From: Klebsormidium nitens
Lineage: Eukaryota; Plantae; Klebsormidiophyceae
Direction: 5' to 3'
Length of the DNA stretch: 64,000 nucleotides
Assembly (NCBI GenBank): GCA_000708835.1
Contig: DF236992.1
Span: forward strand, 14,591 to 78,590
Numbering within the stretch: position 1 is the first letter of the stretch; each line of letters opens with the position of its first letter. Shown in pieces: positions 52,497-60,400 of this stretch. Made by a program: the position numbers and the translations under genes. The notes under the pieces were generated by a model. The model worked only from the letters and a program-made list of their open reading frames with translations, was not told where the DNA came from and made no database searches.

Positions 52497-54535
52497 GGCC
52501 CCCGATCCTTGTTGACTAGCTCTTGTGGCCACCGCTCTCCTCAGTACAGTACTGCAAGGAGTGGCTCTGAAGCAGCAAGTGCCCCCACAAGCTGGCAGTA
52601 ACAGACGGTGCGCCTCTTGAGTAATTATCTCATTGGGACATTTCTAAACTCAACAATTCTACGGGCAAAGTAATGGAAACAAAACTACAGGGAAGTAACA
52701 AGGGGCAGTTGAGGAGTCATGAAGTACACGATCCGTTGAATGCCATCATGAAGGAGAAGTCACACAGATGTCTCTACAGGCAGCTGGGGCTATATTGTGC
52801 CCTCTCTAAGATTTGACTACTTGAAGCGGTTGTCTAGTGAGACATTCTTGACAGTAACTCTCTTGTTCTGCCCACTGCTGCCTTGGTGGCACAAAGTTTG
52901 GCAGTGTTAGCTCCTTTGAGCAAGTAAGGATCAAAGGCCCAGAAACCTTCAAAACAAACAGGCAAACTGACCTCCCGCATTCACAAATGCACGCCAAGCG
53001 GCTGACCTTTTCGCTTGGACGTCAAGTGCGAAGTATATTGCTTGATAGCGTGTTCATCCAAACTTGAAGAAGTGCCTCGGATGTCAGAGTCAACAAGCTG
53101 GATCCCAGTTCTGATTGCTAGACACTGGTTGGGGATGACCGCAATCCCTAGGCCACCTGCATTTGCGTACGTCAGCAGCCGGGAACCAATTGGTTTTGCG
53201 ACGGCGGTGATTTTTTGCAATGCTGTGGCAGTTGGAGCGGGACTTAGGGCAATCATAGCACTGGATGTCTCGTGAAAGCAGATTTGTTTGAAGGGATTGG
53301 TTGTACCTAAGCGCTCATATACATCTTTTAAAGTCCAAGTAGCAAGCGCCTGACAGTGACAGCTTTCCGAGGCAGATGAACATACCTAGCCTGCGTGGGC
53401 AATGTACTATGCAGAGCAAGCAGCTGAGCAAGGACCAAGGAGCAAGTTAGGTACCTAGGACAGGGAAATTCGGGGAAATTCGAGTCACTCAAAATGCAGA
53501 TATATTCAGGGACCAATACGCGCTCTAGAAAGAAGCTTTCGACCGGCCTACTCAACTGCGATAGCCAGTTGGACCGTGACCATAGCGCATCGGCCCTATT
53601 AAAATCGTGATTTATTCTGAATCTCAGCAAGATCTGCACAGTACAGATCAGACTGGTGCAGAGCACAGGAGCCTGAGCCTGAGGAGGAAGGACGGAGGCG
53701 CCGCGAAAATTGAAAGCTGAATCTTCTGCAGGAGGAATAGAGAGTTGCTGAGTGCTGCCTCGGATATTAACGGGTTAGGCCCAGCCAGGTACGCCCTCTA
53801 CTACTTTTGATGAGCAATTTGAGTAAGCGCTTCGTCCTAGGCGGGGTTTTGTTTGAAGCACACGGTGTCCTAATGAGACATGTTTTGAAAATAACCTCTT
53901 TGGGCTTCTCCTCACCGTGCCATTGATTCAGGTCATGTGAGGCGTTGCGGACAATCACCTTGTCTCTTTTGATAAGCAGACACCTTGTCAGTGATTGTGT
54001 CAGCTCTCGTACCACTCGTCGTCGAGTGGTCAATCATACACAATAGTATGATCGATGGAAGGATCTGGGTTCTTGCAATAGTTCACTGTTGATCACCACA
54101 TTGATATAAGTGGATAAGGTATCTGCTCGGGGACCTCTGTTGTGTCACATCATCTTCAGCGGCTAAACTGAGACGGTAAACTTTCTACATAAGCTATGCT
54201 TCTATGAAAACCCTAAACATCATTTTGAATGCACACATGCCTGTGGAAGGACGCTACTTGTATTTGGGTCATATACACAGCATTCGTGCACATTGACTCA
54301 CCCTCAACTCTACTCTAAGCAATAGTTTCAGGAGACCTGTGCGTAAAAGCTATGTGAGGAACCTGCGCAATCTTCAGTTGAATCTTGCAAACGCGGTTTA
54401 AGGAATTACTGGGGTTAAGGAATCACTGGAGATTTGCAGCTTGCCGTTGCCTCTATCAGCGGCTATCCCTACACAGCGGAGCTGCTGTACGCAGCCTGCT
54501 CATCGATTGGACTTAAATCTCTTCCGCATCCGCAG

Positions 54536-55112
54536 ATGAAGGCTATTGACTTCGCTTTCCGTTCTGTAACTGCGGGGCTGGGAGTGGCAACTATTGCTTT
54601 GGGGGCGGGCCTGATTGTCAACGTCATCAGTGGCCTCTCATACCACGCTGCAGTGAGTCCGCGACCTTATTGAACTAGTGTCTTCTTCTCTTCTGATGCA
54701 ACAACTGTTGATACTGACCAAGACATTGGTAGTTTCGGAAGAGCCATTGAAGGGAAGTACTGGCCACTTAACCAGGCTTAGTTAAGCGCGCTGAGTGTTC
54801 CTTGATCAAGCCTCCCTGATTGGGGTCGGCCAAGAGATGGATTGAGGGCCAAAGTTTGAATTGACAGGGTCCCAGCTGGAAGACTTGCCTAAGCAGGCGC
54901 GCATGTGAGTGATGCAAAGCCTTATGTTTTGTCCACTTTCGGTGGATCAGTTGCGGCCCGGATGATGGGAGGAAAGCTTTCGCTAGCCATTTGATCCTCA
55001 GCCCTGCAGAGTGACTCTGTTGACATTGAGTCAGCGAGTACACGTGACCTACTCTCATGTGGTGCAGGTTCCAAAGCCTGAACAGAAGCTGAACGAGCAG
55101 GAGCGGTCCTAA
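54536..55112 (+). CDS. 53-aa single-TM microprotein, COX14-like (complex IV assembly); exons 54536-54652, 55068-55112
   Basis: MKAIDFAFRSVTAGLGVATIALGAGLIVNVISGLSYHAA|VPKPEQKLNEQERS*, with strong donor GCA|GTGAGT and acceptor TGCAG|. Resembles recalled plant D.AF(K/R)..T.GLG.ATI...NV..GLS(W/Y)H peptides assigned to COX14. Confidence 0.62.
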
Positions 55113-55660
55113 GCTCGATAAAGGTGGGGAACTCCGCACCATTTGATTTGATATGACATGTGATTTTTTTTGTGGTGGTCGGTTCTTTTGGCAGTCGAAT
55201 TGGAAGGAAGTTCTTCAGGATGCCTCTATTTGTGTCGTGGCTTGGTTTTGGATGCCGTCTAGTCAGTGGCGGCTTGCGCAAGTCCAGAACTTGCTTGGAG
55301 TGTACTCTTGGTTTCAGTTGCAGCTGGTGTCTGCACACACCACTTGTGGAAGCAGATGTGTGAGTTTTCACCCCAGTTGGCAGCGAAGCAAGGAGCCAAC
55401 GACGGAAGGTCCTGCAAACGTGTCTGTTCCGAGGATGTTCACGAGCTCCACACTGCGTCCGTGTTGCACTCCTCGTGCAGTCCAGCAAACTTGAAAGTGA
55501 TAGCAAGGGCCCAATGTTGTTCGTGTTTCATGGTTCTCTTGTGATTCTTCAGAGGCGACTCTCGTGAACACCACTCTTTTCGTTCCTAAAGCGTCCTGAT
55601 TTCCAGCTGCAGTCCTGTGGCCGTTGATCAGCTCCCGTAAAAGCGAAAAAGAGAGGCACA

Positions 55661-55879
55661 ATGGCAGGGGGCGGGATGGACGTTCACCAGAACAAGTACA
55701 TCGAGGAGTGGGCCACAAAGCGCGAGAACATCGAGAAAGTTTTCAAGTTCAATGGGCGTTCCTTGTCAAGGATTGCCTTGTTTGGTGTTCTCATCCCCGT
55801 TGCCATCTACCAAGTAACAGTTGCTGAGTTTCACAAGACCGACGAGCTCAAAGGTAGGCCGCTCAAGAAGTTAATGTAG
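55661..55879 (+). CDS. NDUFB4: NADH:ubiquinone oxidoreductase subunit B15 (NDUFB4), 72 aa, intronless
   Basis: MAGGGMDVHQNKYIEEWATKRENIEKVFKF...IALFGVLIPVAIYQVTVAEFH...GRPLKKLM is colinear with recalled Arabidopsis At2g31490 (MGGGMETNKNKFIEDW...RENLE...GRP.RKFL). Confidence 0.88.
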   Translation: MAGGGMDVHQNKYIEEWATKRENIEKVFKFNGRSLSRIALFGVLIPVAIYQVTVAEFHKTDELKGRPLKKLM

Positions 55880-55890
55880 TCAGTCAGATG

Positions 55891-56030
55891 TTTTGGGTCC
55901 ACTACCCATTCTGAAACCTCAACGTTCCTGAATTGGAAGGTGTAAGTCAGTATCGAGAAGCTGTTTCGAACTTTCTGGGTCCACTACCCATTTTGACACT
56001 TTCAACGTTTCTGGATCGAAGGTGTCAAGA
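55891..56030 (+). repeat. Imperfect ~55-bp direct repeat in the NDUFB4 3' region
   Basis: TGGGTCCACTACCCATT.TGA.AC.T.CAACGTT.CTG.AT.GAAGGTGT occurs at ~55894 and ~55976. Confidence 0.85.
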
Positions 56031-57445
56031 AATGAGCGGGAACTGTTCCAAAGTAGAAGAGTTTGTGCGTGCTTCTAAGCTCTGCTTGCATGCACTTGGA
56101 CCATCATAAAGAGCATCTTTACGATTGACTTTTAGTTCTCTATTCTAGGCACATAAAAGACCGGTCGCAAATTGGTCCTTTTCTATTCAAGGCCAAAGCC
56201 ATCAACAGTTGTGAAGGCGCTTCAACGTGGCATTTGCTAGAACAAGTATTATGTGGCCATGATGGAACGTGGATGGAACGTTATGCAGAGTTCGTTCTTT
56301 CTGCATCTTGAGGCTTCACCAAGGTCCGTTTGAAACTTGCTGCTTGCAAACGTGAGACTTCATTGCGGCTGCCAAGTAACGCCCGTTCGCACAAGATTTG
56401 TTGCTAGCTGCCCTTCTTCAAGACACGTTGTGGTGTCATGTTAAAGAGGACACTACTATACGAAGCCTTAGGTCAGCTATGGCAAGGTATGTCATCTCAC
56501 AATGAGGAGTACATGCAGCGCGGCAGCAGGCTTGAATGGCATGCAATATCCGATGTTTTTACGGACTGAACGTGGTCCCAAACACCACGACAACAGCCGG
56601 AATGGCTCGCTGCCAGACCGTGCATGTGCAACCTGCTCAAGTGACGGTTGTGTAGATTCCCGACCTGCTGTAGTTGATCCGAGCCCGCCTGCAGAGGAAT
56701 TTGATTCCCCCTTGATCTTCGCCATCGAGCTTCGAGTTTCAGAGTTTGGGAATTGTTCCTAAATTTAAGGGGGGCTCTGATTCCTAGCTAAACATCACGG
56801 ACCGTCCTGGTTCTTGGTTATGGAATTCTGCACACTGCACATCATTGGACCTCAATGTTGAATGGATATACTCGCAAAACTCGATGGTCTCTGTTCGTAT
56901 TCGCCGTAGCCCCCCCGTGTGCCCCCCGCCCGCCCCCCGTTCCCCCGTAGCCAAATAGGTAGGCCATAGGCTTCTCATGCGTCATGGCATACACATGTGG
57001 TGTGTTGATTGATGGTCAGGCTACCGTCTGCAACAGTGTTTGCATTGAATGCCTGGCTCCTAATACTCGCTCTCTCGCTCCTTTCATTGAACCGTCTTGC
57101 AACTCTTCAACTCTTGCATCATAGACTTGTAATATTGCCCAAGTCACGCCACGCGGCTACAACTAGGGTGGGTCATTATTCAGAGCCACATTGGAGTACC
57201 TACAGGAAGTCAGGAAGCATTCAATGCCAACCTAAGTTGGAGTCGGAAGTTTTGGCAGTTTGGTGGCATTGCCGCCTGCGTGGGGGCATCCAAATTCCAG
57301 GGCGCACTTTCTGCCCAATTTTCGTGCCTGTCTTCCTTCTTCGTGTTCCGCCACGGTCACTTATCCTACACATTGGGCTAAGCAGCATTAAGCAATTCAG
57401 TCACATTGACAGGCGGTGTCCTTGTCCGTATCGCCCCTAGCCACA

Positions 57446-60400
57446 ATGTCGTCTGTTGAGAAGTCTGAGAAGAAGAAGAAGAAAAGCAAAGCGAAGTCTG
57501 AGCCGGAGGAGGCCGCTCCGGAGGCAAATGGGGTGCTTGCAGACGCGGCAGCGGGCAATGCACAGCTCTCGACTGACTTCCTTATCAAACCCGAGAACAT
57601 TACCGCCAAGCTCGACACGTCAAAGTGGCCCATATTGCTCAAGAACTACGACAAGCTGAACGTGCGCACCGGGCATTACACGCCAATCCCCACCGGTTTC
57701 TCGCCGCTCAAGCGGCCTCTCTACGACTATGTAAGGTACGGGGTGATAAACCTCGACAAGCCAGCGAACCCGTCGTCGCACGAGGTGGTCGCGTGGATCC
57801 GGCGGATTCTGCGGGTAGATAAAACCGGGCACAGCGGGACGCTTGACCCGAAGGTGACGGGCAGCCTGGTCGTGTGCATCGACCGCGCGACGCGGCTCGT
57901 GAAGGCGCAGCAGGGCGCCGGGAAGGAGTACGTGTGCGTTGCACGGCTCCACTCTGCGGTGGACGACGTCGCCAAGGTGGCGCGGGCAATCGAGACGCTG
58001 ACGGGCGCGCTGTTCCAGCGCCCGCCGCTCATCTCAGCCGTCAAGCGGCAGCTGCGCATTCGGACGATCTACAAGAGCAAGCTGTTGGAGTACGATGCGG
58101 AGCGGCAGCTGGTCGTGTTCTGGGTGTCGTGCGAGGCGGGGACGTACATCCGGACGCTGTGCGTGCACTTGGGGCTGCTGCTAGGGGTGGGCGGGCATAT
58201 GCAGGAGCTCCGGAGAGTGCGGAGCGGGATCCTGGGGGAGCAGGACAATCTGGTAACGATGCACGACGTGCTCGATGCGCAGTGGCAGTATGACAACTAC
58301 AAAGGTGGGTACACGGGAATGGTTTTGGATGGGCGGTAATGGTTGTGGACATTGCTGAGGTTTGTTTCCATGCCGCTGGGGTTGAGGGGCACTGAAGAGG
58401 CACTAGTTGGAAAAAGGTGCACCGGTCTGTAGGCCACTGCATTGTTGGCGGACATATGCAAAGTCTTCATTTTGGGTTTTTTGAAGTTCGGTGTTTTGTG
58501 ACTGTACAAACTGTGATTGTGTTGCCTGCTTGGGCAATGCTGGACCTGGGGAGCTTGAACTTGTTGGCACTTTCTGGCTTTCAAAGTTCTTCTCGGGGCC
58601 AGATTCGGTGTTGGGTTCCTTGACGGAGTGCAAACCAGTACCTTGTTGGATACTGCAAATCATGCAGAGCATTCGAAGGTGTTTCGCTTGTTTGGCACCC
58701 ATTGTTGGCACCCATTGTGTAAGCGCCGCCAGTGTCCATTTTGAAAGTTTAATATAGTCAAAGCTTAGGTCTTCCCTAGCAAATCTGATTGGCAATGCTG
58801 GGACATTGCTGAGAACGTAGGTCTTGGTAGTTCAAGCCCCTGAGTCTTCACATTGAGTGGCAACAATAAGCCGCGGAAGTCCACTTCTCTGCTGGTAGAG
58901 TTTCCAGGACTCAACGTCCTTCCACCTCAGTAATGATACATGAGAGCGGCACCCCACGCTTCAACACGCCAATCGGTCTGAGTGGTGCGGACGGTCATTC
59001 TTTCTACTCAAAGCTTGTAATTCTAGAGTTGGCGGGCAATATTGCAGTGTGAACTTGGAGTAGAAGGTGGGCCCCAGTTTTTGCTGTCAGCTGCCGTTCA
59101 AGCAGATGGATAGAAACGGCAAATGGTGCACAGCTAACTCGGTTGCACGACCGTCAGGTCACCTTTTGACCGCTCACAAATCAGTGCACAGTTGTCACTT
59201 GATGGGCCTTCAGGACAGGTTTTTAATGACAGCGCACTTGCTTCGAGTTGGTGGGCACTTACGAATGTTCGAGGTTCCCACGAGTTCCTTTGAAGCAAGC
59301 TTTTTGGGCTGGCAGCTGCCCTTACTCAGTTGCGCAGACAAGGCGGCCTGTGTCAGCCTCCGCTCCTTATGGGTTTGATCTGCCTCACCAGGCTTTGTTT
59401 GAGAGTTTTTGAAAGAGCGCCTCCCAATGGTTCAAGGCTACGTAGCCACATCTTTCAATATCTTCCCCAGAGTTGGTTACCATCTCTGATTATCTGGAAT
59501 GATCACCTTCAAGACTTTGACTGCCACTTCATCATTACGTGCCACATTCAGACACCCTCCCTATAAGCACCACCTCGCTCTTTCCACAGGTCCTGTCTGC
59601 TTCTCTGGAAGAAGTGAACCTGGACTAGAATCATCGCTACACTATTTTTTTCATCCTCTTTCTTTCAGTGGGATCCACTTGTCTCACTGCGCTGCCCCGC
59701 TTATGCCTATCACAGATGAGGCATACCTGCGGCGCGTCATCTCCCCTCTGGAGATCCTGCTGACCAGCTACAAGCGGATCGTGGTCAAGGACAGCGCAGT
59801 GAACGCCATCTGCTATGGGGCAAAGCTCATGATCCCGGGGCTGCTTAGGTGAGGCATTCATTTCCGTCATTATTTCCATCCCTCCTAAGTTTGATCTGGA
59901 CTGCGCCACACCTAAAGTTGATTTTATTCTCCAGTTGCTTCCAGCGAAATATGGCCGCTTCGGTCCCTCCGCCCCATGATCGAAGCTCAGACTAGTCCTT
60001 CAAGATCCGGCGCTTCTCCCCTGCTTTTTATACTGGGCTTACACCCTCCCAAGCTTTTGTTGCCCACTTCACCTCCGCCAGCTTTCGACCTTCTGCACCT
60101 GCCTCTCTGAGGATGCTTGTAATTCTGAGTGTCTGGTGGAGGCCCGTTCTATGCAAGGTCTGTCCAATGTATTCTTGCATATTCCAGGTGTTTTTGCGCT
60201 TCTTGTGGAACCTGTCTCGATTGCAAACGGACCTCCCAACCTTTCATCCAACTTGTTGCCTAAATTTCGATTCCTTGGTAACGTTTGCTTACATTTCTTC
60301 CTTACGTCCATGTGTCTTGAACATGGCTATCGCCCATCGGCCTCTCTCTTTTCGCCAGCAGCTCAGCTCCAAGCTGGCAACACTCTGCGAGTTGCTCTGT

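What the first reader, a model, noticed from the sequence alone, without database searches (positions are those of the whole stretch)
54536..55879. Candidate bicistronic mRNA: COX14-like microprotein followed by complex I subunit NDUFB4
Seen in sequence: two small same-strand ORFs, both resembling mitochondrial respiratory-chain proteins. A donor (AAAG|GTGGGG) sits 11 nt after the ORF1 stop, and a pyrimidine-rich acceptor (TTTCCAGCTGCAG|) sits 48 nt before the NDUFB4 ATG. Splicing 55124-55612 leaves a 59-nt spacer. I read the spliced ORF1 and spacer base by base and found no ATG in any frame, so the next AUG after the ORF1 start is the NDUFB4 start. ORF1 has A at +4 (weaker context), while NDUFB4 has a strong context (ACAATGG). 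Established knowledge: chlorophyte algae have polycistronic nuclear mRNAs translated by leaky scanning, with AUG-free first ORFs. Inference: this is a streptophyte-alga dicistron that couples a complex IV assembly factor to a complex I subunit.
Basis: partly seen in the sequence, partly recalled or inferred. Interest (0 to 1): 0.85.

Follow-up and report, generated by a model that had tools for sequence, protein, structure and literature searches.

The report
COX14-NDUFB4 two-protein mRNA in Klebsormidium
In the streptophyte alga Klebsormidium nitens, one spliced nuclear mRNA carries two small mitochondrial proteins in a row, a COX14-like complex IV assembly factor and the complex I subunit NDUFB4, which extends the two-proteins-per-mRNA arrangement known from chlorophyte green algae to a close algal relative of land plants.

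Summary
The window is Klebsormidium nitens.

- **ORF2 (55661-55879):** a full-length plant-type NDUFB4/B15 (E 9e-20 to the Vigna complex I subunit).
- **ORF1 (54536-54652 + 55068-55112, 53 aa):** belongs to a plant-wide ~57-aa family. That family's profile aligns end to end with human COX14 (hhalign 92.6%, score 34 against at most 16 for 150 shuffles). Pfam's COX14 model does not reach threshold.
- **RNA evidence:** assembled RNA contigs from four studies show three GT..AG junctions (53788^54536, 54652^55068, 55123^55613). Their depth is 4 to 70 times that of the unspliced forms, by run and junction. One 770-nt contig carries both ORFs.
- **Other samples:** two environmental contigs from a related alga are fully spliced and carry ORF1, a 59-nt spacer and NDUFB4.
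- **Conservation:** five Klebsormidium-like sequences (about four distinct lineages) keep the layout. ORF1 is always 53 codons, no AUG lies between the two starts, the spacer is 59-69 nt, and the ORF2 context is strong. ORF1 dN/dS is 0.07-0.35.
- **Elsewhere:** in the land-plant loci fetched, the COX14-like gene stands alone.

Translation of ORF2 by leaky scanning is inferred, not shown. This is a new member of a known kind. Earlier unchecked notes of this scan list other bicistronic loci in the same genome.

The parts
53671..53788 (+). Exon 1, non-coding 5' leader (about 100-118 nt, no ATG). The 5' end is approximate.
   Evidence: Joint 53788^54536 in 4 runs. The X19 contig starts at 53689 and there is an adapter-tagged loose end at 53671 in X6. 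No ATG in 53602-53788. A homologous leader is joined directly to the ATG in L035/L036.
53789..54535 (+). Intron 1 (5' UTR intron, GT..AG). Its acceptor cag| lies directly before the ORF1 ATG.
   Evidence: joint, depth 146-1306 against 11-43 for the unspliced contig. The same cag|ATG is seen in L001, L032 and L034.
54536..54652 (+). Exon 2: ORF1 codons 1-39 (COX14-like, N-terminus and membrane helix).
   Evidence: Homologs. The intron position after codon 39 is shared with the lycophyte Diphasiastrum.
54653..55067 (+). Intron 2 (GT..AG), inside ORF1.
   Evidence: Joint 54652^55068 in 4 runs, depth 186-1473.
55068..55123 (+). Exon 3: ORF1 codons 40-53, stop TAA at 55110-55112, then 11 nt of inter-ORF spacer.
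   Evidence: The exon is spliced on both sides at equal depth.
55124..55612 (+). Intron 3, the bridging intron between the two ORFs (GT..AG).
   Evidence: Joint 55123^55613 in 4 runs, depth 161-1504 against 10-22 for the unspliced contig 55094-55640. Equivalent introns of 467-1674 nt occur in L034, L032 and L001.
55613..55660 (+). First 48 nt of exon 4: the rest of the 59-nt AUG-free spacer.
55661..55879 (+). ORF2: NDUFB4/B15 subunit of complex I, 72 aa, context acaATGg.
   Evidence: 8e73_B4 E 9.2e-20, At2g31490 E 1.6e-17, aligned over residues 3-72 of 72.
55880..56250 (+). 3' UTR (about 330-370 nt). The 3' end is approximate.
   Evidence: Contigs end at 56164-56252. No RNA in 56274-57108.

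Best explanation
This is one transcription unit of Klebsormidium nitens that makes a single mature, four-exon mRNA of about 0.9 kb. The mRNA has an AUG-free leader of about 100-118 nt. ORF1 (53 codons) encodes a COX14-like single-pass membrane protein. A 59-nt AUG-free spacer follows, created by splicing out a 489-nt intron that begins 11 nt after the ORF1 stop. ORF2 (72 codons) encodes the complex I subunit NDUFB4. The 3' UTR is about 350 nt.

Shown here: the exon structure, the co-linearity of both ORFs on spliced RNA, the identity of both products, purifying selection on both, and conservation of the layout among Klebsormidium relatives.

Inferred: 40S subunits load at the cap. Some start at the ORF1 AUG, which has a poor context (C at -3, A at +4). 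The rest scan on through 218 nt without any AUG and start at the NDUFB4 AUG, which has a good context (A at -3, G at +4). One promoter and one mRNA would then deliver both mitochondrial inner-membrane proteins at a ratio set by the ORF1 context. The ORF1 stop lies only 11-22 nt before the next exon junction, which by the usual 50-55 nt rule should not trigger junction-dependent mRNA decay (also inference).
For: - **Junctions:** three GT..AG joints occur in all four runs from four studies, at depths of 146-1504. The unspliced contigs have depths of 10-43. X19 record 13 is one 770-nt contig covering 54535-54652 / 55068-55121 / 55611-56208.
- **Depth across the locus:** junction depth is about equal to or above the depth of the NDUFB4 exon contig (1504 vs 765, 161 vs 186, 864 vs 572). 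There is no sign of a large extra pool of NDUFB4-only RNA.
- **Independent spliced contigs:** L035 and L036, from two other JGI samples and about 86% identical in nucleotides, are intron-less. They carry the leader, ORF1, a 59-nt spacer and NDUFB4.
- **Same layout in relatives:** the exon/intron layout recurs in genomic loci L001, L032/L033 and L034. ORF1 is always 53 codons, there is never an ATG before the NDUFB4 ATG, the spacer is 59-69 nt, and the frame relation is 0, 1 or 2. The ORF2 context is always A at -3 and G at +4.
- **AUG depletion:** absence of ATG has P 0.028 (window) and 0.016 (L001) in shuffles.
- **Selection:** among distinct lineages ORF1 dN/dS is 0.07-0.35 and ORF2 is 0.00-0.17; the near-identical L001/L032 pair has no ORF1 amino-acid change.
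- **NDUFB4 identity:**
- **COX14 identity:** atlas features score 0.89 to three COX14 clusters. There are 247 plant homologs, some named cytochrome c oxidase assembly protein. hhalign to human COX14 gives 92.6% over 46 columns, score 34.1 against 8.7 +/- 2.0 for shuffles.
- **Mechanism precedent:** leaky scanning with these same signatures was shown experimentally for chlorophyte bicistrons (PMC11892635; PMC7896298).
Against: - All RNA evidence comes from assembled contigs, not reads. Contigs cannot show transcript ends, and their depth is a crude measure.
- The runs are labelled RNA only by guess, although the spliced joints show they hold RNA.
- A minor NDUFB4-only transcript starting inside 55613-55660 cannot be excluded.
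- The last ~190 nt of the bridging intron are somewhat more conserved (60-72% against 36-46% to L034) than its 5' part, which could reflect an internal promoter.
- No evidence for translation of either ORF was available.
- ORF1 is 53 codons with a 59-nt spacer, so reinitiation is not excluded.
- Context strength was judged by the general eukaryotic rule, not by a K. nitens consensus.
- ORF1 itself gets no Pfam COX14 hit.
Confidence: 0.75

Rival explanations
1. The mRNA is the same dicistron, but NDUFB4 is translated mainly by reinitiation. Ribosomes translate the short ORF1, terminate, keep scanning for 59 nt and start again.
For: ORF1 is short (53 codons) and the spacer of 59-69 nt is long enough for reloading of initiation factors. 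AUG depletion near the ORF1 stop is also expected under reinitiation, as discussed in PMC11892635.
Against: The AUG depletion covers the whole of ORF1, not only the area near its stop. The ORF1 context is poor while that of ORF2 is good. In chlorophyte bicistrons, mutational tests favoured leaky scanning over reinitiation (PMC11892635). None of this was tested in Klebsormidium.
Confidence: 0.15
2. These are two ordinary neighbouring genes with their own promoter and poly(A) site. The bridging junction would come from read-through transcripts with intergenic splicing, as described for Arabidopsis, and NDUFB4 would be made mostly from a monocistronic mRNA.
For: Contigs cannot show transcript starts or ends. 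The 3' part of the bridging intron is moderately conserved. Intergenic-splicing read-through transcripts exist in plants (PMC9768141).
Against: The bridging joint is as deep as the two other joints and as the NDUFB4 exon in all four runs. The unspliced intron contig is at 1.5-6% of that depth. Exon 3 is only 56 nt and is spliced on both sides. The layout, the splice sites and the AUG-free state are kept across lineages with dS of 0.4-1.7. Independent spliced contigs come from other samples.
Confidence: 0.06
3. ORF1 is only a regulatory upstream ORF of the NDUFB4 mRNA, and its peptide has no function of its own.
For: It lies upstream of a well-known main ORF and is small. The K. nitens annotation treats the locus as one small hypothetical gene.
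Against: The peptide belongs to a family present as a stand-alone gene across land plants, with 247 hits. The intron position is shared with a lycophyte. dN/dS is 0.07-0.35. There is profile similarity to human COX14.
Confidence: 0.04

Closest known systems
Exclusively bicistronic nuclear mRNAs of chlorophyte green algae (Chlamydomonas, Chromochloris, Auxenochlorella; PMC7896298, PMC11892635), for example the TOM22-like/SDHAF3-like locus
   Same: Two small non-overlapping ORFs lie on one capped, spliced mRNA with a short inter-ORF distance. ORF1 has a weak context and ORF2 a strong one, and AUGs are depleted upstream of ORF2. The pair is conserved among related species. Both products are mitochondrial, as in the TOM22/SDHAF3 pair.
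   Different: The host is a streptophyte alga (Klebsormidiophyceae), not a chlorophyte. The gene pair COX14-like/NDUFB4 is not mentioned in those papers. An intron sits inside the inter-ORF spacer, and another abuts the ORF1 AUG. Translation has not been tested here.
CDC26-TTM3 bicistronic transcript of land plants (named in PMC11892635 and PMC9768141; details from my own knowledge of Lorenzo-Orts et al. 2019)
   Same: A conserved small protein is encoded upstream of a second, unrelated ORF on one streptophyte mRNA.
   Different: The genes are different. Here both products belong to the respiratory chain. The pairing was seen only in Klebsormidium relatives, not in the land-plant loci examined.
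COX14 / C12orf62 (Pfam PF14880), the COX1 assembly factor of fungi and animals
   Same: Length of about 53-57 aa with one central membrane helix. The family profile aligns collinearly with human COX14 and shares the pattern D-x-x-[FY]-[KR]-x-x-[ST] ... N/R-V-Y ... W/Y-H/R-x-A-Q.
   Different: No member tested reaches Pfam's gathering score; 3 of 40 are sub-threshold and the K. nitens protein gets no hit. There is no detectable similarity to yeast Cox14. The function in plants is untested, and a 2018 review lists no plant COX14 (PMC5877523).
NDUFB4 / B15 subunit of plant complex I (Vigna 8e73_B4, Arabidopsis At2g31490 in 7a23)
   Same: About 71-72 aa, aligned over the whole length with about 50% identity, and the same MxGGGM N-terminus.
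   Different: In the plant-like NDUFB4 contigs fetched (L002, L003), no upstream COX14-like ORF is present. Here NDUFB4 is the second cistron.

Membership tests
Green-algal type bicistronic nuclear mRNA | Two non-overlapping protein-coding ORFs on one mature spliced transcript | tested here: met
   (three joints in 4 runs; one 770-nt contig with both ORFs). (L035/L036 spliced contigs).
Green-algal type bicistronic nuclear mRNA | Exclusive: no substantial monocistronic transcript for either ORF | tested here: inconclusive
   Depths argue for it: the unspliced bridging intron is at 1.5-6% and there is no excess of NDUFB4 exon depth over junction depth. Contigs cannot show starts or ends, so long reads or CAGE are needed.
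Green-algal type bicistronic nuclear mRNA | Weak initiation context at ORF1, strong at ORF2 | tested here: met
   cagATGa against acaATGg in the spliced mRNA. ORF2 has A at -3 and G at +4 in all five sequences, and L035 ORF1 is also cagATGa. Strength was judged by the general rule, not by a species consensus.
Green-algal type bicistronic nuclear mRNA | Depletion of AUG between the ORF1 and ORF2 start codons | tested here: met
   Zero ATG in 222-232 nt, P 0.016-0.028. Zero in all five related sequences.
Green-algal type bicistronic nuclear mRNA | Both polypeptides are produced from the one mRNA | not testable with these tools
   No Ribo-seq or proteomics was available. Purifying selection on both ORFs is indirect support only.
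COX14 (PF14880) | Match to the Pfam COX14 model at or above the gathering score (25 bits) | tested here: not met
   ORF1 gets no hit at E<=10. Of the family members, 3 of 40 hit at E<=0.01, the best at 20 bits.
COX14 (PF14880) | Profile-level homology to a bona fide COX14 | tested here: met
   hhalign of A3 against human COX14: probability 92.6%, E 4.4e-7, 46 collinear columns. Score 34.1 against a maximum of 15.8 in 150 shuffles. Yeast Cox14 gives no match. Atlas feature hits are all COX14 clusters.
COX14 (PF14880) | Small single-pass inner-membrane protein acting in COX1 maturation | not testable with these tools
   The size (53 aa) and one uncharged stretch of about 23 residues (positions 13-35) are seen directly in the sequence. 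Location and function were not tested.
NDUFB4 / B15 complex I subunit | Full-length similarity to a subunit resolved in complex I structures | tested here: met
   8e73_B4 at 9.2e-20, 7a23_l at 1.6e-17, also Chlamydomonas 9f5x_h at 1.3e-4; residues 3-72 aligned to 2-71.
NDUFB4 / B15 complex I subunit | Match to any Pfam-A family model (which would include an NDUFB4 model) | tested here: not met
   No Pfam family at E<=10. Identity therefore rests on the match to solved plant structures.

The most novel reading that the evidence does not exclude
Exclusively bicistronic, leaky-scanning mRNAs are a regular feature of gene expression in streptophyte algae as well as chlorophytes. This locus would then hard-wire the synthesis ratio of a complex IV assembly factor and a complex I subunit. 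Because the ORF1 AUG is the first base of exon 2, its upstream context comes entirely from exon 1. Alternative first exons could therefore re-tune the COX14:NDUFB4 ratio. A minor one ending at 54175, which would place A at -3, is seen in one run.
Probability: 0.2. Interest if true: 0.75.

Novelty: new member of a known kind. Interest (0 to 1): 0.58.

Why it matters
**Lineage.** Polycistronic nuclear mRNAs are documented in chlorophytes, and only isolated cases are known in land plants. A well-supported, conserved and apparently exclusive bicistron in Klebsormidium places the mechanism in the streptophyte lineage. No paper in the searched library links Klebsormidium with nuclear bi- or polycistronic genes.

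**Annotation.**
- The public K. nitens model for ORF1 carries an unsupported N-terminal extension.
- One-ORF-per-transcript gene callers will tend to miss one of the two proteins.
- The work points to the probable plant-lineage COX14, which a 2018 review of plant complex IV biogenesis lists as absent (PMC5877523).

**Use as a test case.** The locus is compact: two tiny ORFs and a 59-nt spacer. That makes it a convenient test case for how scanning ribosomes share one mRNA between two respiratory-chain proteins.

Tried and rejected
- **Pfam on both ORFs:** no hit. NDUFB4 identity was obtained from solved structures instead.
- **PDB search with ORF1 and with its family profile:** nothing meaningful, so no solved COX14 relative was found.
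- **Word-indexed protein search with single sequences:** only Klebsormidium-level hits. The exhaustive representative search and a profile search were needed.
- **Annotated start of KFL_000430110** (ATG at 53402 plus a 10-nt mini-exon 53779-53788): rejected. No such joint exists in any run, three of four runs have no RNA at 53435-53601, and the real joint is 53788^54536.
- **Read-through or frameshift fusion of the two ORFs:** rejected. The frame relation differs among relatives (0, 1, 2).
- **Known structured RNA or IRES-like family in the locus:** none in Rfam at E<=1.
- **Conserved linkage outside Klebsormidium:** not found. The searches covered 12 NDUFB4 loci from metagenomes and 18 land-plant or plant-like loci holding the COX14-like gene, from about six sources. 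Other streptophyte algae could not be sampled with the remaining caps.
- **Upstream part of L035/L036** (a DUF3700 gene on the same strand): no counterpart in the window. It was treated as a different neighbour or a chimeric assembly and not used as evidence.

Full report
**Source and sequence check**

The window is Klebsormidium nitens. ORF1 is 100% identical to the C-terminal 53 residues of KFL_000430110, and the annotated upstream exon of that model lies in the window at 53402.

- The ORF1 ATG is at 54536.
- A GT donor follows codon 39 (54652|54653) and an AG acceptor lies at 55067|55068.
- The stop TAA is at 55110-55112.
- The donor AAAG|GTGGGG lies 11 nt later (55123|55124).
- The acceptor ctgcag|TCCTGT is at 55612|55613, and the NDUFB4 ATG is at 55661.

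Spliced, ORF1 is 53 codons and the spacer is 59 nt. No ATG occurs in any frame between the two starts, and the two ORFs are in different frames. Dinucleotide shuffles of that 222-nt stretch give a mean of 2.7 ATGs and no ATG in only 2.8% of trials.

**RNA evidence**

Twenty public runs hold the stretch, 18 of them half of its sampled words or more. I laid the contigs of four runs from four different studies on 52600-57600. All four show the same three GT..AG joints:

| Joint | X1 | X5 | X6 | X19 |
|---|---|---|---|---|
| 53788^54536 | 1306 | 146 | 663 | 208 |
| 54652^55068 | 1473 | 186 | 812 | 239 |
| 55123^55613 | 1504 | 161 | 864 | 239 |

- **Unspliced forms:** the unspliced contigs over the same introns have depths of only 10-43.
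- **Both ORFs on one contig:** in X19 one 770-nt contig runs 54535-54652 / 55068-55121 / 55611-56208 and so carries both ORFs.
- **NDUFB4 exon depth:** the NDUFB4 exon contig (765, 186, 572) is not deeper than the bridging joint. There is no sign of a large separate pool of NDUFB4-only RNA.
- **Missed intron:** It is a 747-nt intron in the 5' UTR whose acceptor lies immediately before the ORF1 ATG.
- **Exon 1:** it ends at 53788 and begins near 53671-53689, judged from an adapter-tagged loose end in X6 and the start of the X19 contig. Three of four runs have no RNA at 53435-53601. There is no ATG in 53602-53788.
- **3' end:** RNA stops at about 56164-56252 and is absent until about 57109-57290, by run, where the next gene (dyskerin-type) begins.
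- **Caveats:** these are assembled contigs, so transcript ends and exact levels are not shown. The runs are labelled RNA only by guess, although the abundant spliced forms show that they hold RNA.

**Independent confirmation from relatives**

A look-up of the NDUFB4 protein brought in two JGI contigs from other samples (L035, L036). They are about 86% identical in nucleotides to the window and contain no introns. A leader homologous to exon 1 is joined directly to the ATG. ORF1 follows (53 aa, 87% identical), then a 59-nt spacer and NDUFB4. No ATG occurs within 240 nt upstream of ORF1 or between the two starts.

Three genomic loci of further relatives have the same four-part layout, with introns of other lengths: L001, L032/L033 and L034.

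All five sequences share these features:
- ORF1 is exactly 53 codons.
- No ATG precedes the NDUFB4 ATG.
- The spacer is 59-69 nt.
- The ORF1 stop lies 11-22 nt before the exon junction in the four genomic sequences (the fifth is spliced mRNA).
- NDUFB4 has A at -3 and G at +4.
- In the four genomic sequences the ORF1 ATG is the first base of its exon (cag|ATG).

The relative frame of the two ORFs is 0, 1 or 2, which excludes a fusion by read-through or frameshifting. Among distinct lineages pairwise dN/dS is 0.07-0.35 for ORF1 and 0.00-0.17 for ORF2, at dS of 0.4-1.75, so both are under purifying selection as proteins.

**Identity of the products**

ORF2 matches the NDUFB4/B15 subunit in solved plant complex I structures over its whole length: Vigna 8e73_B4 at E 9.2e-20 and Arabidopsis At2g31490 at 1.6e-17. 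The Chlamydomonas subunit matches more weakly. Pfam gives no hit.

ORF1 has no Pfam or PDB hit, but several lines link it to COX14:
- An exhaustive search found eight small plant proteins at E 4e-5 to 8e-4.
- A profile search found 247 proteins, mostly ~57-aa 'hypothetical proteins' of land plants. A few are named cytochrome c oxidase assembly protein.
- Pfam COX14 is matched only below threshold, by 3 of 40 members.
- The family profile aligns with human COX14 over 46 collinear columns at 92.6% probability.
- The hhalign score is 34.1, against 8.7 +/- 2.0 (maximum 15.8) for 150 shuffles of the human sequence.
- The three best hits of the protein-atlas feature search are COX14 clusters, and all ten of its best family-bearing hits share that family or clan.
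- Yeast Cox14 gives no match.

I therefore read ORF1 as the plant-lineage counterpart of COX14, with function untested. A 2018 review lists no plant COX14 (PMC5877523). The coding intron after codon 39 lies at the same place in the lycophyte Diphasiastrum.

**Range of the linkage**

The COX14-like gene stands alone, with no NDUFB4 within the flanks, in these loci:
- Diphasiastrum (L014).
- Papaver (L016).
- Angiosperm-like metagenome loci (L017-L031).
- A plant-like spliced transcript contig whose organism is not identified (L015).

Twelve NDUFB4-bearing metagenome loci (31-51% identity) have no COX14-like ORF upstream. With the tools left I could not sample other streptophyte algae. The pairing is so far documented only in Klebsormidium and close relatives.

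**Mechanism**

The locus has the set of features that define chlorophyte bicistronic mRNAs and that were shown there, by mutation, to work through leaky scanning. These are a weak ORF1 context, a strong ORF2 context, depletion of AUGs upstream of ORF2, and a short inter-ORF distance (PMC7896298; PMC11892635).

I therefore take leaky scanning as the most likely route to NDUFB4 synthesis. Reinitiation after the 53-codon ORF1 is a real alternative.

An internal promoter feeding a minor NDUFB4-only transcript cannot be excluded. The last ~190 nt of the bridging intron are somewhat better conserved than its 5' part, although intron 2 is conserved to a similar degree. No Rfam family matches the locus.

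**Comparison with what is known, and verdict**

This is a new member of a known kind. It is a bicistronic nuclear mRNA of the green-algal type, in a streptophyte alga, with a gene pair not mentioned in the two key papers. No paper in the library links Klebsormidium with nuclear bi- or polycistronic genes.

Earlier notes of this scan list 21 'bicistronic' candidates in the same genome. Two had follow-ups that reported spliced two-ORF messages (s1-344061, s1-334303). I did not test those, and they are leads only, but they suggest the arrangement is not unique to this locus.

Interest is moderate to high. The evidence is unusually clean for a sequence-only call. The locus extends a recently discovered mode of gene expression towards the land-plant lineage, and it corrects the annotation of two respiratory-chain genes.

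Noticed in passing
window 53402-53446 and 53779-53788: The public model KFL_000430110 (71 aa) adds 18 N-terminal residues from an ATG at 53402 and a 10-nt mini-exon. No RNA joint supports this, and three of four runs have no RNA at 53435-53601. The supported product is 53 aa starting at 54536.
   Followed up: yes
window 54175^54536: One run (X19) has a minor alternative first exon ending at 54175 and joined to the ORF1 ATG (depth 8 against 208). It would put A instead of C at -3 of the ORF1 start.
   Followed up: partly
window 52600-53404: RNA contigs cover 52600-53404, with a splice-like loose end at 53007. This looks like a neighbouring gene about 270 nt from the start of the dicistron. Its strand is not shown by the contigs; the head-to-head reading rests only on minus-strand ORFs, which gave no Pfam hit.
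   Followed up: partly
window 57416-58339 (+): The next gene downstream is a dyskerin/CBF5-type pseudouridine synthase (DKCLD, TruB_N, TruB_C_2). About 850-1,000 nt (by run) without RNA separate it from the dicistron.
   Followed up: partly
L035:1-828 and L036:3-749: The two spliced environmental contigs continue upstream into a same-strand DUF3700 (aluminium-induced protein) gene that has no counterpart in the window. This is either a different neighbour with overlapping transcripts in that alga or a chimeric assembly.
   Followed up: partly
window 55424-55612: The last ~190 nt of the bridging intron are 60-72% identical to L034, against 36-46% for its 5' part. This could reflect splicing signals or an internal regulatory element.
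   Followed up: partly
alignment A3 (land-plant ~57-aa family): A widespread, mostly unnamed ~57-aa land-plant protein family appears to be the plant COX14. A 2018 review of plant complex IV biogenesis lists COX14 as having no plant homolog.
   Followed up: partly
It was not examined here.
   Followed up: no
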